The position numbers and the translations under genes were made by a program. A stretch of 64,000 nt of DNA from IMG/VR virus record IMGVR_UViG_3300046559_001153, positions 1-64,000 of that record; one strand, given 5' to 3'. This document shows, one piece after another, positions 20,786-38,338 of this stretch. The notes under the pieces were generated by a model. That model had not been told where the DNA came from, made no database searches, and saw only the letters and a list, made by a program, of their open reading frames with translations. The number at the start of each line of letters is the position of its first letter. The first letter of the stretch is position 1.

Positions 20786-20820
20786 GTTTCCCGGGCCATA
20801 TTGGCCCGGGGCATTTTTTT
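20786..20820 (+). terminator. Intrinsic terminator
   Basis: CCCGGGCCA-TAT-TGGCCCGGG followed by T7. Confidence 0.8.
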
Positions 20821-27649: not shown

Positions 27650-27812
27650 GGAGCGGCTCGTTAGCTTGCGAAAGCAATCTGACGGTTCTTCTCTAGGTGA
27701 TCCAGATTAAGACCCATCGGCCCGATTCGACTGATCTGGGTCACCTTCGTTCTGCTCACGAGGCATTGTCTGATCGTCCCCTGGCCGGGTAGTCAGACAA
27801 TGCCGGCGTGAG
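27650..27812 (+). ncRNA. Candidate structured RNA/leader with three hairpins
   Basis: Stems 27659-27684 (GAAA tetraloop), 27695-27746 (15 bp, two G.U), 27755-27812; non-coding gap. Confidence 0.55.
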
Positions 27813-27813
27813 T

Positions 27814-27831
27814 TTAACTTTTTAATAAGGT
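27814..27831. promoter_or_regulatory. Palindrome copy 3 (TTAACTTTTTAATAAGGT)
   Basis: Exact reverse complement of 12498-12515. Confidence 0.55.
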
Positions 27832-27843
27832 ACGGGAGACACC

Positions 27844-28272
27844 ATGCGACAAGTCTTGCTAACGGTCGTCGCTACGACCATTGCTCTTATCGGGATTCTT
27901 TTGTTCATGGTGCTTTGCTTGGTGGAGTTCGTTTTGAAAGTCAGTCTTGATTTGTTGAATGCGGGCGAAGACCGCCTGTATGAGTTGGTTGCAAAACTTT
28001 CGGGAATTTTTCGAGCGGTCGGCCAGGCCGGGAAAACTCCCACTCATGCGTCAGAGAACACGACGCGACATGGAGGTGATGATGCTTGTTTTAAGTCGAA
28101 AGGCCAGCGAGGAAATTCGATTGACGGACACGCAAACGGGCCAAACGATTGTGCTCATGGTCGTACAAATCAGAGCAGGGAAAGTTCGACTGGGGATTCA
28201 AGCCCCGCAGACGGTAGTAGTGACACGGGGCGAGTTGTTGAAAAACCGACAGTCGGTGGATCAAGTCGTTGA
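27844..28272 (+). CDS. Putative membrane protein overlapping csrA out of frame
   Basis: GGGAG SD; strongly hydrophobic first 30 aa; C-terminal half overlaps csrA. Confidence 0.4.
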   Translation: MRQVLLTVVATTIALIGILLFMVLCLVEFVLKVSLDLLNAGEDRLYELVAKLSGIFRAVGQAGKTPTHASENTTRHGGDDACFKSKGQRGNSIDGHANGPNDCAHGRTNQSRESSTGDSSPADGSSDTGRVVEKPTVGGSSR

Positions 28273-28288
28273 ACAAAACGCCTCTTAA
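28082..28288 (+). CDS. csrA: CsrA/RsmA translational regulator
   Basis: MLVLSRK..E.I...I.L.VV.I..GKVRLGI.AP..V.V.R.EL; GGAGGT SD. Confidence 0.9.
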   Translation: MLVLSRKASEEIRLTDTQTGQTIVLMVVQIRAGKVRLGIQAPQTVVVTRGELLKNRQSVDQVVEQNAS

Positions 28289-28339
28289 CCAGACCAGACT
28301 GGGCCAGCTAAAAAATAACGCCGGTAACCCGGCAAAAAT

Positions 28340-28458
28340 GACCTCCCTTGGCCCACTGTGGCTGATGGGGATTATTGTGAACGGTTGTTGTTCATCCTTT
28401 GGGATGGCGACACCTGTTCCCCGTAATCCCCATCAGCCGCAGTGGGTTAAGGGTTGTC
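28340..28458 (+). ncRNA. Long rod-like RNA hairpin
   Basis: 31-bp arm 28345-28375 pairs with 28423-28453, all four non-WC pairs G.U; inner stems continue to a short loop. Confidence 0.6.
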
Positions 28459-28504
28459 TCACCTCGGGCAAACTGTGTTGCCTTTTACCTATTAGGTATT
28501 ACGC

Positions 28505-28867
28505 ATGTTGAAGAGAATTTTTGTGGAGATCCTCGTCGAGGTGCCCCCAAGTGATCCAGGCTTCGTACCTGAATTGGAAGTTTATGTAGCCAATACTCGA
28601 ACCGAGTTGGCACATCGGGCACATCCAACGCTGACGTCGTTAATCCAGTACGTGATCACGCATCTCAACGGCTCCCCCTGTCAGTGCTGCCGCAGCGACT
28701 ATCTGAGCGCACCGATCCCCGGCATCCGGGCCCGAATCGAGGGCGGACGCGTTGCCGAGCACGCGAAGGTCGAACGATGCGACAAATGCGAGTGTTTCAG
28801 AAGCGATGCGGCTGCTGAAGTGGCTCTGAATCTCTACATGGCCCATCAGGACTTTTACGCGTTATGA
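28505..28867 (+). CDS. Hypothetical Cys-containing protein
   Basis: CQCC and VERCDKC. Confidence 0.6.
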   Translation: MLKRIFVEILVEVPPSDPGFVPELEVYVANTRTELAHRAHPTLTSLIQYVITHLNGSPCQCCRSDYLSAPIPGIRARIEGGRVAEHAKVERCDKCECFRSDAAAEVALNLYMAHQDFYAL

Positions 28868-28937
28868 ACTGGTTGTCCTGGCTCTGATTTGATAATCTGA
28901 TTTCGTGGGCCCCACTCGTAACGAAAGAGAATCGATC

Positions 28938-29237
28938 ATGAATTTGAAAGTCGTGTCCGTCGACAAGGAAGCCGGTGTCGTGACTGTGGAAGCTGAGACC
29001 TTCGCTCCGGCCGATTTCCCGGTCGCCATCGAATCGCTCAAAGAAGGTCTGCGAGTTCCCAACATGGCCATCGAAGCGGCCAAGGCCGCTGGAATCAGTA
29101 ACCCGACGATTGTCTCCAGATCACGACATCCCTACCCGTATTTCGGTGAAGGGGTTGATCAGGACGAACTGGCCAAGAGCAGCGCCGAACCGATCTCTTA
29201 CAGGATTGACGTTCCCATCTCGAGCTTCTCGATGTAG
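28938..29237 (+). CDS. Hypothetical protein
   Basis: ATG 28938 after purine-rich tract. Confidence 0.6.
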   Translation: MNLKVVSVDKEAGVVTVEAETFAPADFPVAIESLKEGLRVPNMAIEAAKAAGISNPTIVSRSRHPYPYFGEGVDQDELAKSSAEPISYRIDVPISSFSM

Positions 29238-29241
29238 TCAA

Positions 29242-29979
29242 ATGCCGACGATCGACCGACCACAACAACGTGGCCCGCTAATGCAGCGAGCCATTCAGCG
29301 TTCGACCAGCGACCCAATCGGGAAGCTGTTGCTCGACCCTGAGGCATTCGCCACGTCCTTGTTGATCGTTCTGGTTGATCACTACGGCCAAGAGGCCTTA
29401 CGCTGGGCCCCTCAAACGATTCGAATGCACCTCGAGGAAGATTTCCAGGTAAGCATTCTTCCGCTGAATTTTGACAAGTTAATGGCTGCCATTACAATCG
29501 TGACGACTGACTTCTATTTTCGAGATCTGTCACGATTCATCATTCTGACGAATGCTCTGTGCGGTGACGGCTTCTCATTTACCGAGTTCGATAAAGCTGA
29601 CGTCCACGAGTGTGCCTGGGGCATTGTCGAGGCCTGGATGTTGAATCCGCCAGACAGCCAGCAGCCGTTTGATACGGCTATCCGGCACTACTTGTCCGTT
29701 CTGCTTCAACACGACGGTTACGTCGTGCCGCCAGGCATGCTGAGAATGGCCATAGACGGCGACCGGACCGCTGGTGTAATGAGGAACTTCGGACACGATC
29801 CGCAGATGCTGGCTACGATCAACGCTGTGCAGTCCGATAAGACCCGTGAGGTCGACGACATGGTGCAGCGCAATCTACAGGAGTTACTGGCTCAGATAAA
29901 GGACCTGCCGTTAAAGACAGGTAATTCCAAAAACATCGCTGAGACGCTTGTCAACGAGCTCAAGAAAATCAGAGCATGA
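29242..29979 (+). CDS. Helical phage hypothetical protein
   Basis: D.YG.EAL.W.P.T, NAL, CAWGI.E motifs; start 29242 or 29281. Confidence 0.65.
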   Translation: MPTIDRPQQRGPLMQRAIQRSTSDPIGKLLLDPEAFATSLLIVLVDHYGQEALRWAPQTIRMHLEEDFQVSILPLNFDKLMAAITIVTTDFYFRDLSRFIILTNALCGDGFSFTEFDKADVHECAWGIVEAWMLNPPDSQQPFDTAIRHYLSVLLQHDGYVVPPGMLRMAIDGDRTAGVMRNFGHDPQMLATINAVQSDKTREVDDMVQRNLQELLAQIKDLPLKTGNSKNIAETLVNELKKIRA

Positions 29980-30172: not shown

Positions 30173-30586
30173 ATGTCCCACATTGTGACCCTCAAGACCC
30201 TCAAGACCCAGATCACCAACATCGACGCGCTCGATACGGCATGCAACAAACTCGATCTCAGGCTGAACCGCGGCCAGAAGTCTTTCAAGTCGTTCGGCAG
30301 CGTCCGTCCGGCCTGCGAACACGCCATCTCCATGGCACAGCCGCAACAGGGTGACTACGAGATCGGCCTCGTCCAGGACGGCGACGCGTTCACGTTGAAG
30401 TACGACTTCTACAATCAGCACAATCGTCTGGAGAAAGCGGTTGGCGCCAACTGTGACCTGCTCACCCAGCGGTACGCGGTTGAAGTCGCCCGCGCCGAAG
30501 CTCAGGCCAAAGGCTTTGAGTGCTTCGAAACGGTCGAGCAGGACGAGTCGATCACGCTTCAGGTCTGCGTTGGCGCCGGTGCTTAA
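30173..30586 (+). CDS. DUF1257 / Ycf35-like protein
   Basis: MSHIVT..TQI....AL..AC, YEIG, D.Y, L.QRYA.E.AR.EA..KG. Confidence 0.75.
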   Translation: MSHIVTLKTLKTQITNIDALDTACNKLDLRLNRGQKSFKSFGSVRPACEHAISMAQPQQGDYEIGLVQDGDAFTLKYDFYNQHNRLEKAVGANCDLLTQRYAVEVARAEAQAKGFECFETVEQDESITLQVCVGAGA

Positions 30587-30888
30587 TGCTCGTCAAACGC
30601 ATTGATGTACAGCAAAAACACATCGATTGCGGGGAACCAGACTCAGCCACGTCATGCCCAGTCGCCTGGGCGGTGGCTGAAGCTTTTGGGTTCGACCCGG
30701 CATCCCTCGACTGCGAAGTGTATGTTGAGGGCAGCGATATCCAAGTAGACACCCCGGGGCTAGCCCGTCGCGGGATAATCTCGCAGCAGGTCTCCGATTT
30801 TGTCAATCGCTTCGATGACCGACTCGACGTTGCGCCATTCTCGTTCGATTTCGAATACGAAGAAAATGTACTGATATCGGACGACTAA
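30586..30888 (+). CDS. Hypothetical protein
   Basis: I.V.Q.HI..G....CPVA.A...FV.RFD..V.PFSF. Confidence 0.65.
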   Translation: MLVKRIDVQQKHIDCGEPDSATSCPVAWAVAEAFGFDPASLDCEVYVEGSDIQVDTPGLARRGIISQQVSDFVNRFDDRLDVAPFSFDFEYEENVLISDD

Positions 30889-30914
30889 TCTCAAATCACT
30901 CGAAAGGAAGTCAA

Positions 30915-31100
30915 ATGCAATTCGTAAACATCAACATCAAGAAGGGCGGAAGTGTCACGATCGACGCTGTCGGCTTTACAGGCACGTCCTGCAAAGCGGC
31001 GACCGCCGCGTTCGAACAGGCCCTGGGGACCATCCAGGTCGACCAGGATAAGCCAGAACTCTTCGAGACCCTCTCCACCGACACGAACGTTTCCAACTAA
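30915..31100 (+). CDS. DUF2997 family protein
   Basis: I...G.V.I...GF.G.SC..AT..FE.ALG......KPE. Confidence 0.8.
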   Translation: MQFVNINIKKGGSVTIDAVGFTGTSCKAATAAFEQALGTIQVDQDKPELFETLSTDTNVSN

Positions 31101-31117
31101 TCCGCGAAAAGGACACT

Positions 31118-32731
31118 ATGGCCGTTTCGAGCACTGAAGAAGTCGTTTCTACAAGTCCCCTGCAACATCAACTGGAGGATTACATCAAGGCCGGGTTCAC
31201 TGGAATCTGGATCAACACGTATGAGCATCTGAACGTTATCGAAGAGATTTGCGATCTGCGAAAGCAATACGGCTGGAATGTGGCCGTATGGGACAGTGAC
31301 CTGGGAATCCGCCTGGCCACCGACAAAGGAGTTATCCCCGTAAAGGAGATCACCTCGGGTGTCCCAGACCAGTTGCGGACGGTCTCCACCCCGGGATCGG
31401 CCGCCACGCTGGCTCGAACCTGGTATGACGAGGAGTTCGATCCAGACGACACAAGCCCTGACCGACGACCGCCTACACCACATGTCGTGGTGTTACGCAA
31501 TTTTCACGGCTATGCCAGCGCCACAGCACAGATACTGCAGAATACTGTCGAAATGTGCCGACGGTTGTGTTCGTTCACGATCATTCTCAGCGCGTTGCAG
31601 AGGATCCCGGCCGAACTTGAAAAGGACTTCGTGGTCATCGCCTACGATCTCCCGAACAAGGATGAGCTGAAGAAAATCGCCGGCAACCTGCTGAAAGACG
31701 ACGAGCAGGAGATGCTGGACGAACCGGAGACTGACAAGGCCGTTGAGGCTGCACGCGGTCTGACCCGCATTGAAGCCGAAAACGCGTTCAGTCTGTCGCT
31801 CGTCCAGACAGGATCAAAACGCCTCGAGTACCGATCGGTCTGGCAGCAGAAAAAACAGATGGTCTCGAAGAGCGGTCTGCTCAACTTTTACGAGGGCCAG
31901 GAACAGCTGACTGATCTGGGCGGTTTGGCGTCGCTCAAGAATTTCTGCCTGAAGGCCCTGCTGCACAAACCGGATGCTGTGGCCAAACCCCGCGGTATCC
32001 TGCTGATCGGACCGGCCGGTACAGGCAAATCGGCAATCGCTAAGGCTCTTGGAAATGCGGTCGGACGTCCGACGATCTCCCTGGACCTCGGATCGCTGAT
32101 GGGCAGTCTGGTTGGACAGACTGAATCCCAGACGCGTCAAGCCCTGCAGATTATCGACGCGTGCAGTCCGGCGATCCTCATGGTCGAAGAAGTCGAGAAG
32201 GCCCTGGCTGGCACCCGCTCGTCGGGACAAACGGACGGCGGCATTATGGCTCGCATGTTCGGCATGCTGCTCGCGTGGCTTAACGACCACGAGTCAGACG
32301 TCTTCTGCGTGATGACCTGTAACGGGGCTGAAAGCCTGCCGCCAGAGTTCACACGCGCTGAACGTTTTGATGCGACCTTCTTCCTGGATCTGCCCACGAA
32401 GAAGGAGAAAGCGGCCATCTGGCCGATGTACATCAAGCACTTCCGACTGACCGACAAACAAACAGCACAAATGCCAATGGACGAAGACTGGACTGGAGCC
32501 GAGATCCGCTCGTGCTGTCGTTTGTCTTCGCTATTGGACATTTCGCTGGTCGAGTCGGCCAACAATGTGCGGCCGGTTGCCGTGACTGCCAAGGAGTCGC
32601 TGGACTCGCTGAGAACGTGGGCATCGGCCCGTTGCCTGAGTGCCTCTTATCCCGGTCCGTACGCCAAAGACAAGAAGTCACCGTCATCGGGGACTGGCGG
32701 ACGCCAGATCCTGAAGAGCGAGAATAACTAG
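31118..32731 (+). CDS. Ycf46-like AAA+ ATPase
   Basis: Degenerate N-terminal AAA (IP.ELEK, GLT..EAE); Walker A GPAGTGKS, Walker B variant MVEEVEKAL, LPPEF.R.ERFD, WTGAEI. Confidence 0.85.
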   Translation: MAVSSTEEVVSTSPLQHQLEDYIKAGFTGIWINTYEHLNVIEEICDLRKQYGWNVAVWDSDLGIRLATDKGVIPVKEITSGVPDQLRTVSTPGSAATLARTWYDEEFDPDDTSPDRRPPTPHVVVLRNFHGYASATAQILQNTVEMCRRLCSFTIILSALQRIPAELEKDFVVIAYDLPNKDELKKIAGNLLKDDEQEMLDEPETDKAVEAARGLTRIEAENAFSLSLVQTGSKRLEYRSVWQQKKQMVSKSGLLNFYEGQEQLTDLGGLASLKNFCLKALLHKPDAVAKPRGILLIGPAGTGKSAIAKALGNAVGRPTISLDLGSLMGSLVGQTESQTRQALQIIDACSPAILMVEEVEKALAGTRSSGQTDGGIMARMFGMLLAWLNDHESDVFCVMTCNGAESLPPEFTRAERFDATFFLDLPTKKEKAAIWPMYIKHFRLTDKQTAQMPMDEDWTGAEIRSCCRLSSLLDISLVESANNVRPVAVTAKESLDSLRTWASARCLSASYPGPYAKDKKSPSSGTGGRQILKSENN

Positions 32732-38212: not shown

Positions 38213-38338
38213 AGCAACCGCAGGCTTCCAGGCTGCCCCGGTGGCAGCCTGGTGGCCCGTTGCGGGTCTTATCGGGCGTTCGGACGGTCCGACGCGTCGT
38301 GGGGCATCCTAGAGCGTTGTTAAGATAGGGGGTTTGAG

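What the first reader, a model, noticed from the sequence alone, without database searches (positions are those of the whole stretch)
28340..28458. Approx. 120-nt rod-like hairpin whose outer-arm deviations are all G.U
Seen: CCCTTGGCCCACTGTGGCTGATGGGGATTAT pairs with GTAATCCCCATCAGCCGCAGTGGGTTAAGGG (31 bp, four G.U, no true mismatch), then GAACGG/CTGTTC, TGTTGT/GCGACA and CATCC/GGATG. This strand asymmetry implies selection on + strand RNA. Two GGA motifs are sequestered in the stem. Inference: an RNase III substrate, dsRNA decoy or CsrA-related sRNA. A smaller hairpin lies at 38214-38265.
Basis: partly seen in the sequence, partly recalled or inferred. Interest (0 to 1): 0.62.

Follow-up and report, generated by a model that had tools for sequence, protein, structure and literature searches.

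The report
Conserved double-stranded RNA rod in large phages
The 120-nt hairpin is real and is the window's copy of a long, almost perfectly paired RNA rod that dozens of uncultured large phages keep at the same gene boundary (here just after a phage csrA gene) while its sequence changes freely; its duplex fits an RNase III-type processing or stability signal, not a CsrA sponge or a mobile repeat.

Summary
Window 28340-28458 folds into a 49-52 bp rod (-90 kcal/mol, z = -10). All 7 non-Watson-Crick pairs are G.U on the + strand.

- **Uniqueness:** it is single-copy and by far the strongest helix in the 224-kb phage genome (score 32; next best 16).
- **Context:** it lies 52 nt after a phage csrA gene and 47 nt before a Cys-rich ORF, ahead of a recurring boundary signal.
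- **Conservation:** orthologous rods of 21-80 bp occupy the same place in 27 distinct relatives from soil, freshwater and marine metagenomes, with or without csrA. Sequence is not conserved but pairing is. Compared with the closest diverged relative, the outer helix has 4 double compensatory changes, 4 GC/GU switches, paired indels and no disruption.
- **Strand:** across all rods there are 107 G.U pairs against 17 A.C oppositions (p = 4e-17). The sense-strand fold is the more stable in 26 of 27.
- **Rejected readings:** GGA motifs are paired and not conserved, so a CsrA sponge is unsupported. A MITE is excluded. The rod lacks a U-run and is 3-4 times longer than this phage's terminators.

The best reading is a cis-acting dsRNA element of the sense transcript, most likely an RNase III-type processing, insulation or stability site. 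That mechanism is inferred, because no RNA data exist.

The parts
27755..27833 (+). Upstream boundary signal: a hairpin (27755-27812) followed by a T-rich tract and an AAGGTA motif. It marks the start of the unit that contains csrA and the rod.
   Evidence: It has the same layout as the signal after the rod and as the sites.
27844..28272 (+). Open frame with a good ribosome-binding site (GGGAGA at 27834-27839). The N-terminal half looks like a small membrane protein. It overlaps csrA out of frame and its status is uncertain.
   Evidence: Gene callers on sister contigs did not call it.
28082..28288 (+). Phage csrA gene (68 aa), with ribosome-binding site GGAGGTGA at 28072-28079.
   Evidence: Pfam PF02599, E = 1.1e-15, 57.8 bits against a cut-off of 27. 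PHROG 9500, CsrA-like regulator. The residues I recall as RNA-binding in E. coli CsrA (L2, L4, R6, V40, V42, R44) look conserved by eye; this is unverified.
28320..28333 (+). Small 5-bp tetraloop hairpin immediately 5' of the rod.
   Evidence: It covaries in L095 (CCGAC-TTCG-GTCGG). An equivalent small hairpin precedes the rod in most relatives. Read on the - strand it resembles a terminator or boundary signal.
28340..28458 (+). The rod: 31-bp outer helix (28345-28375 / 28423-28453), three inner helices, apical UUUG loop (28398-28401) and an outer GAC/GTC extension.
   Evidence: Orthologs appear.
28467..28498 (+). Downstream boundary signal: small hairpin GGCAA/TTGCC (28467-28482), a T-run and TTTTACCTAT (28483-28492), then TTAGGTA. 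It is a one-base variant of the clade-wide TTTAGCTAT motif.
   Evidence: It is conserved in L095, L104, L109 and L126.
28505..28867 (+). ORF120, a Cys-rich protein of unknown function. It is found only in the window's subclade and sits between the rod and the ORF99-family gene.
28938..29237 (+). ORF99-family gene, the most constant downstream neighbour of the rod across the clade.
   Evidence: Its fold matches no solved structure.
29242..29979 (+). ORF245-family gene, the clade marker used to retrieve relatives.

Best explanation
The rod is a cis-acting double-stranded RNA element of the sense (+) transcript. In this phage it sits at the 3' end of a short unit (27813 to about 28486) that carries csrA. 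It lies just upstream of a standard boundary signal that precedes the next gene.

What is conserved is a long, uninterrupted A-form duplex (at least 21 bp in every relative, about 50 bp here) and not any sequence. The factor that reads such a duplex is most likely the host's double-strand-specific endonuclease, RNase III.

Cleavage in the stem would separate the upstream message from read-through RNA entering the ORF120/ORF99 block. It would also set the 3' end, and so the stability, of the csrA message. Known analogues are the T7 intercistronic RNase III sites and lambda sib retroregulation.

**Shown:** the structure, its uniqueness, its orthologs, the compensatory evolution, the strand specificity and its position.

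For: - **Structure and uniqueness:**
- **Orthologous rods:** they sit at the same intergenic place in relatives whose proteins are 75%, about 40% and 31-44% identical. In 25 of 32 loci the top helix falls in the same quarter of the locus (p = 1e-9).
- **Pairing kept while sequence turns over:** in the outer helix of window against L095 there are 4 both-sided compensatory changes, 4 GC/GU switches, whole-base-pair indels and 0 disruptions. L104 and other rods are unrelated in sequence.
- **Sense-strand RNA:** 107 G.U against 17 A.C (p = 4e-17). The + strand fold is the more stable in 26 of 27 rods. All flanking genes are on the + strand.
- **Length:** all 27 rods have at least 21 bp. This phage's intrinsic terminators are 10-14 bp stems with a U-run. 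The rod has no U-run and the terminator scan does not flag it.
- **Termination is covered separately:** a terminator-like small hairpin with a T-run follows the rod (28467-28486), so termination does not need the rod.
- **RNase III biology:** RNase III cuts intramolecular stems on both strands and leaves 2-nt 3' overhangs (PMC6212723). My recollection is that about two helical turns are the minimal substrate.
Against: - There is no RNA evidence at all. No RNA run holds this phage, so transcription, RNA ends and cleavage are untested.
- The host is unknown, so the presence and specificity of its RNase III are unknown. The phage encodes no RNase III of its own.
- In several AT-rich relatives a U-rich tract directly follows the rod, which also fits a plain long-stem terminator.
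- About a quarter of clade loci (12 of 44) have no long helix, so the element is dispensable.
- Nothing explains why some rods reach 70-80 bp.
Confidence: 0.45

Rival explanations
1. The rod is a long-stem transcription terminator and/or a barrier to 3' exonucleases. It acts only through its stability, without RNase III. It ends or protects the upstream message and insulates the downstream block.
For: It sits at an operon boundary. In roughly 6-10 of 27 relatives a U-rich tract directly follows the stem, for example in L120, L121, L106, L128 and L116. Sense-strand specificity fits this reading equally well.
Against: The window rod and most GC-rich relatives have no U-run after the stem. The phage's own terminators need only 10-14 bp. 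A separate small hairpin with a T-run follows the rod. Stems of 50-80 bp kept by compensatory change are far more than termination or exonuclease blocking requires.
Confidence: 0.25
2. The rod is a stand-alone or processed non-coding RNA that acts in trans. It could be a dsRNA decoy or sponge for a host or phage dsRNA-binding protein, or a precursor of short RNAs.
For: The rod is kept whatever the upstream gene is. It is bracketed by small hairpins that could define a discrete RNA. Only duplex shape is conserved, as expected for shape-reading proteins. Its only Rfam resemblance is to pre-miRNA-shaped models, well below threshold.
Against: No promoter was found between csrA and the rod. No dsRNA-binding protein was identified nearby. 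Sequence is not conserved, so base-pairing to a fixed target is unlikely. There is no expression data.
Confidence: 0.12
3. The rod is a DNA-level element: a hairpin formed by the + strand when single-stranded, for example a priming or origin-associated signal on the lagging-strand template.
For: G.T is the most tolerated DNA mismatch. The rods still fold as single-stranded DNA (z = -9.2, -10.4, -4.8 and -3.9). The genome's cumulative GC-skew minimum (31,653) lies about 3 kb away. A replication-linked element would also be positionally conserved.
Against: DNA folding energies are about half the RNA values, and the G.U-rich rods are marginal as DNA. The strand that pairs is always the coding strand of co-oriented genes. 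The skew minimum is shallow and not at the rod. A cruciform read on both strands predicts no asymmetry, which is contradicted.
Confidence: 0.07
4. The rod is a CsrA-titrating or CsrA-controlled RNA, in the manner of CsrB or RsmZ, that works with the adjacent phage csrA.
For: csrA lies immediately upstream here and in at least 11 relatives. The window rod contains two GGA motifs.
Against: Both GGA motifs are base-paired. The apical one is lost in L095. L105 and similar rods have no GGA. Rods occur at the same place without csrA. Only one of 26 unrelated viral csrA loci has a downstream rod, and that one (L026) proved to be a clade member. There is no Rfam match to any Csr/Rsm family RNA.
Confidence: 0.03
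5. The rod is a selfish palindromic insertion (MITE- or Correia/ERIC-like), or a neutral quasi-palindrome kept symmetric by template-switch repair rather than by selection.
For: Inner parts of the rods differ greatly in length between close relatives (L105 has 64 nt, L121 has 128 nt with similar outer arms). That would fit palindrome growth at the apex.
Against: It is single-copy in the genome. There are no copies elsewhere in IMG/VR and no flanking direct repeats. It is inherited at one orthologous site across a deep clade. DNA-level symmetrisation cannot produce the 6:1 excess of G.U over A.C. The genome's base skews (G>C but A>T) do not fit a one-strand deamination bias strong enough to do so.
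Confidence: 0.02

Closest known systems
Intercistronic RNase III processing signals of phage T7/T3 early and late mRNAs (e.g. R1.1), from my own knowledge
   Same: They are hairpins in the sense transcript of a phage. They lie between genes and are positionally conserved among relatives. They are read as duplex shape by host RNase III. Cleavage leaves a stem at the 3' end of the upstream message.
   Different: T7 sites are about 20-25 bp with a characteristic internal loop, and there are many per genome. Here there is one site per genome, the duplex is near-perfect and 21-80 bp long, and cleavage is untested.
Lambda sib / int retroregulation, from my own knowledge
   Same: A hairpin downstream of a regulatory gene whose RNase III cleavage controls the stability of the upstream message.
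   Different: The sib stem is much shorter and forms only on read-through transcripts. There is no evidence here for two alternative transcripts.
Correia (NEMIS) and ERIC repeat hairpins in bacterial transcripts, from my own knowledge
   Same: They are imperfect palindromes of 100-150 nt that are co-transcribed with neighbouring genes. Correia hairpins are cut by RNase III and change mRNA stability.
   Different: Those are dispersed multi-copy mobile repeats. The rod is single-copy and vertically inherited at one locus.
CsrB/RsmZ-type CsrA-sequestering RNAs
   Same: Genomic association with csrA in this phage, and the presence of GGA triplets.
   Different: Sponges display many GGA motifs in loops. 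Here GGA is paired, not conserved and often absent, and there is no Rfam match.
Intrinsic (Rho-independent) terminators
   Same: A stable hairpin at the end of a transcription unit. A U-rich tract follows in some relatives.
   Different: The stem is 3-4 times longer than this phage's own terminators. There is no U-run in the window copy. A separate terminator-like hairpin follows.

Membership tests
RNase III substrate (intramolecular stem) | Continuous or near-continuous RNA duplex of about two helical turns or more | tested here: met
   The window rod has a 31-bp uninterrupted outer helix and 49-52 bp in all. All 27 orthologous rods have at least 21 bp.
RNase III substrate (intramolecular stem) | The structure is formed by a transcribed RNA strand | tested here: inconclusive
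   The indirect evidence is strong: G.U against A.C is 107:17, the sense strand is favoured in 26 of 27 rods, and the genes are co-oriented. There is no direct evidence, because no RNA run exists.
RNase III substrate (intramolecular stem) | Staggered double cleavage that leaves 2-nt 3' overhangs and depends on rnc (PMC6212723) | not testable with these tools
   This needs RNA-end mapping in wild-type and rnc-mutant hosts. The host is unknown.
RNase III substrate (intramolecular stem) | Absence of antideterminant base pairs in the proximal and distal boxes | not tested
   The rules are defined for E. coli. The host is unknown and the cleavage site is undefined.
Intrinsic terminator | Short GC-rich stem (about 5-14 bp) immediately followed by a U-run | tested here: not met
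   The terminator scan does not flag the rod. The 3' flank of the window rod is not a U-run. Genuine terminators of this phage have 10-14 bp stems with a U-run.
CsrB/RsmZ-like CsrA sponge | Multiple GGA motifs exposed in loops or single-stranded regions and conserved among homologs | tested here: not met
   Both GGA motifs are paired. The apical one is lost in L095, and L105-type rods have none.
CsrB/RsmZ-like CsrA sponge | Match to a described Csr/Rsm RNA family | tested here: not met
   Rfam gave nothing at gathering thresholds over the whole window. The permissive scan of 27700-28950 returned only sub-threshold pre-miRNA-shaped and CRISPR-repeat models.
MITE / dispersed palindromic repeat | Multiple dispersed copies | tested here: not met
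   There is one copy in the 224-kb genome. Matches of a 15-mer from the arm in IMG/VR are single-arm chance hits.
MITE / dispersed palindromic repeat | Target-site duplication flanking the element | tested here: not met
   No direct repeat abuts the two ends. The flanks instead form conserved small hairpins.
6S RNA-like rod | Large central bubble that mimics an open promoter | tested here: not met
   The outer 31 bp are uninterrupted and only 1-3 nt internal loops occur near the apex. There is no Rfam 6S match.
CsrA protein family (the upstream gene) | Match to Pfam PF02599 above the curated cut-off | tested here: met
   57.8 bits against a cut-off of 27, E = 1.1e-15, covering profile positions 1-51 of 53.

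The most novel reading that the evidence does not exclude
The rods are a new family of phage-encoded double-stranded RNAs that act in trans. One possibility is a shape-only decoy that occupies or saturates a host dsRNA-reading factor (RNase III or a dsRNA-sensing defence) during infection. Another is a precursor diced into short duplex RNAs. Either would make them a bacterial-virus counterpart of the viral dsRNA decoys or pre-miRNA-like hairpins of eukaryotic viruses. Their frequent pairing with a phage csrA would then reflect a small post-transcriptional takeover module.
Probability: 0.1. Interest if true: 0.8.

Novelty: new variant of a known kind. Interest (0 to 1): 0.55.

Why it matters
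This analysis gives a well-supported candidate for a new structured-RNA family in a large, uncultured clade of 100-230 kb phages found in soil, freshwater and marine samples. It has 27 distinct members, a fixed genomic position, strong compensatory evolution and clear strand specificity.

No Rfam family matches it. Stems of 50-80 bp are unusual for bacterial or phage cis-elements.

If the rod is an RNase III site, it shows that T7-style duplex processing signals are used, in an exaggerated form, by distant large phages. It would also tie phage-borne CsrA to a defined 3' control element.

If the rod acts in trans, it would be a new type of phage RNA. Either way it gives a concrete, cheap experimental target. 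The recurring boundary motif found alongside it may be the clade's promoter or gene-start signal.

Tried and rejected
- **Rfam:** the gathering-threshold scan of the whole window gave nothing. The permissive scan of the region gave only sub-threshold pre-miRNA-shaped models.
- **Copies elsewhere:** a 15-mer from the arm found 63 loci in IMG/VR. All are single-arm chance matches.
- **Strain variants:** nine near-identical strain contigs have an identical intergenic region, so they carry no information.
- **Sequencing runs:** 22 DNA holders from soil or rhizosphere and no RNA holder. Laying four low-share runs showed only fragments of the same phage with no variants.
- **First metagenome scan:** the scan with ORF120 found nothing.
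- **Unrelated viral csrA loci:** among 26, only L026 has a downstream rod, and it proved to be a clade member. There is therefore no general link between csrA and a rod.
- **Metrics that failed:** total folding energy and the base-pair count of unbranched MFE hairpins did not discriminate rods from ordinary sequence. A strict helix statistic replaced them.
- **Alignment-based covariation:** the MAFFT and RNAalifold run on seven rods misaligned the 3' arms and is not used as evidence.
- **Phage-encoded partners:** no RNase III, FliW or T7-like RNA polymerase was found. The T7-like polymerase search rang in no control genome either, so it does not show absence.
- **Motif as a genome-wide promoter:** TTTTACCTAT itself occurs only once. 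The related TTTAGCTAT does recur.
- **ORF99 family:** AlphaFold gave pLDDT 79, but there is no significant PDB match.
- **Cultured relatives:** INPHARED has no phage with the ORF245 family. The AAA ATPase hits only distant phages.
- **One-strand deamination bias:** considered as a neutral source of the G.U excess and rejected. The genome has A>T as well as G>C, and a 6:1 ratio is too large.

Full report
**Observation.** The window is the first 64 kb of a 224,270-bp IMG/VR virus record with direct terminal repeats. Its GC content is 55.5%.

- a 31-bp outer helix (28345-28375 with 28423-28453), with four G.U pairs and no mismatch;
- three inner helices;
- a UUUG apical loop;
- a 3-bp GAC/GTC extension.

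As + strand RNA it folds at -90.4 kcal/mol (z = -10.4). As - strand RNA it folds at -73.7 kcal/mol. All seven non-Watson-Crick pairs are G.U on the + strand.

It is single-copy in the genome. It has the highest folding energy per nucleotide of any hairpin in the genome. I also used a fold-free helix statistic (Watson-Crick +1, G.U +0.5, mismatch -3). On it the rod scores 32, against 16 for the next best helix in 224 kb on either strand.

**Context.** All genes around the rod are on the + strand.

- *Upstream:* the ORF at 28082-28288 is a CsrA homolog (Pfam PF02599, E = 1e-15; PHROG CsrA-like regulator). It has a strong ribosome-binding site.
- *Downstream:* ORF120 (28505-28867) is a Cys-rich protein without a known family. 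It is followed by an ORF99-family gene and an ORF245-family gene, both of unknown function.
- *Immediate flanks:* a 5-bp tetraloop hairpin (28320-28333) directly precedes the rod. After the rod come a small hairpin (28467-28482), a T-run and the motif TTTTACCTAT (28483-28492).

This phage's ordinary intrinsic terminators are 10-14 bp GC-rich stems followed by a U-run. One of them lies upstream of the csrA unit, at 27755-27812. The rod has no U-run, is 3-4 times longer and is not flagged by the terminator scan.

**Relatives.** Nine near-identical strain contigs carry an identical intergenic region and are uninformative. More distant relatives carry the evidence.

- *L095.* ORF120 is 75% identical. 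It has a homologous rod (-104 kcal/mol with flanks, z = -13.6). Compared with the window, the outer helix shows 4 pairs changed on both sides, 4 GC/GU switches, whole-base-pair insertions and deletions, and no disrupted pair. The inner helices and the apical stem differ in sequence but still pair. The small 5' hairpin also covaries.
- *L104.* CsrA is 40% and ORF120 38% identical, and the gene order is the same. It has a rod of unrelated sequence at the same place: -77.9 kcal/mol on the + strand against -50.7 on the - strand.
- *L026/L121, L105 and L109.* These belong to the same phage clade, as the shared ORF99 and ORF245 families show. Each has a rod at the same relative position. L109 has no csrA.
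- *Metagenome scan.* A scan with the ORF245 family returned 62 further loci from freshwater, marine and soil samples.

Applied to all loci, the strict helix statistic places the strongest + strand helix in the same quarter of the locus in 25 of 32 cases. That quarter lies just upstream of the ORF99-family gene (p = 1e-9). About 12 of 44 deduplicated loci have no long helix, so the element is common but not universal.

**Properties of the family (27 distinct rods).**
- Stems are 21-80 bp, and none is shorter than 21 bp.
- Sequence is conserved only within subgroups.
- A small hairpin immediately 5' of the rod is common.
- Totals are 902 Watson-Crick pairs, 107 G.U pairs, 17 A.C oppositions and 35 other mismatches. 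For G.U against A.C the binomial p is 4e-17.
- The sense-strand fold is the more stable in 26 of 27 rods (Wilcoxon p = 8e-6).

A DNA palindrome that drifts or is symmetrised at the DNA level should show G.T and A.C oppositions equally. A one-strand deamination bias strong enough to give 6:1 does not fit the genome's composition, where both G>C and A>T hold. The structure is therefore selected in the sense-strand RNA. A + strand single-stranded DNA hairpin remains formally possible. The rods still fold as DNA, at about half the energy and only marginally for the G.U-rich ones. The genome's shallow GC-skew minimum lies 3 kb away.

**What the rod is not.**
- *Not a MITE.* It is single-copy, has no target-site duplication, and is inherited at one orthologous site.
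- *Not a CsrA sponge.* Both GGA motifs are paired. The apical one is lost in L095. Several rods have no GGA. Rods occur without csrA. Unrelated viral csrA loci lack rods.
- *Not a member of any described RNA family.* Nothing in Rfam reaches threshold.
- *Not a canonical terminator.* See the Context section above.

**Boundary motif.** In nine diverged relatives the sequence CTTTAGCTATTG is invariant. It lies about 50 nt after the rod and 13-35 nt before the next start codon.

In the window's genome the exact TTTAGCTAT occurs on the + strand at 20818, 144709, 175068 and 194775. Each site is preceded by a small GC-rich hairpin and a T-run. The sites after the rod (28467-28498) and before the csrA unit (27755-27833) are variants of this signal.

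The rod is therefore an extra, unique element placed inside a unit that already has its own standard boundary signal. This argues against the rod being merely the terminator. It places the rod in the 3' untranslated part of the csrA-containing transcript, or makes it a discrete RNA between two signals.

**Mechanism.** The only conserved property is a long, near-perfect RNA duplex of at least two helical turns. The cellular factor that reads such a shape regardless of sequence is RNase III. It cuts both strands of intramolecular stems and leaves 2-nt 3' overhangs (PMC6212723).

The closest precedents, from my own knowledge, are three:
- the intercistronic RNase III sites of T7 and T3;
- lambda sib retroregulation of int;
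- RNase III-cleaved Correia hairpins.

I therefore favour a cis-acting processing, insulation or stability element. It would uncouple the csrA unit from the downstream block and set the 3' end of the upstream message (confidence 0.45).

The rivals are:
- a long-stem terminator or exonuclease barrier (0.25);
- a trans-acting dsRNA or decoy (0.12);
- a single-stranded DNA hairpin (0.07);
- a CsrA-related RNA (0.03);
- a selfish or neutral palindrome (0.02).

That the rod is a selected sense-strand RNA structure I hold at about 0.9. The specific reader and its consequence are inferences. The phage encodes no RNase III of its own. The host is unknown, no cultured relative exists, and no RNA data exist.

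**Verdict.** This is a real, exceptional and evolutionarily conserved RNA rod. It is a new variant of the known class of phage duplex processing and stability signals, and a good candidate for a new RNA family. Its mechanism still has to be shown at the bench.

Noticed in passing
own genome 20818, 144709, 175068, 194775 (+); window 28467-28498 and 27755-27833; alignment A5: A recurring gene-boundary signal: a small GC-rich hairpin, a T-run and TAGCTAT(CAG). CTTTAGCTATTG is invariant in nine diverged relatives, 13-35 nt before the next start codon. It could be the clade's promoter or a combined terminator and start signal.
   Followed up: partly
window 27844-28272 (+): An open frame with a good ribosome-binding site. 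Its N-terminal half looks like a small membrane protein. It runs out of frame across the whole of csrA. Gene callers on sister contigs called a 62-aa minus-strand ORF there instead.
   Followed up: no
window 28505-28867 (ORF120), residues about 55-108: A Cys-rich C-terminal module (CxCC ... CxxCxC) occurs at the C-terminus of about 95 otherwise unrelated proteins in the 1.8-billion-protein library. It has no Pfam family and may be an undescribed zinc-binding domain.
   Followed up: partly
window 28300-28334 (- strand): Read on the minus strand, the small hairpin 5' of the rod is followed by a T-run and TAGCTGG. This is the same kind of boundary signal pointing leftwards, antisense to csrA. L095 has TTAGTTGG at the equivalent place.
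   Followed up: no
It is not related to the rod.
   Followed up: partly
window 28938-29237 (ORF99 family) and relatives: This conserved small protein is always downstream of the rod. AlphaFold gives pLDDT 79, but there is no significant PDB match. The best row is archaeal RNA polymerase subunit L (E = 0.14, TM 0.33), which is too weak to use.
   Followed up: partly
L014:3143-3283; L008 and L009 downstream of csrA: Other viral csrA loci show different downstream features. L014 has a GGA-rich structured stretch that looks more like a CsrA-binding RNA. L008 and L009 appear to have tRNA genes, judged by eye from the sequence.
   Followed up: no
window 30173-32731: A DUF1257 protein and a 537-aa AAA ATPase (PHROG 8638) lie a few genes downstream. 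Distant AAA ATPase homologs occur in Mycobacterium, Vibrio and Agrobacterium phages.
   Followed up: no
own genome, cumulative GC skew: The skew minimum is at 31,653, about 3 kb right of the rod. It is shallow, and genes on both sides are on the + strand.
   Followed up: no
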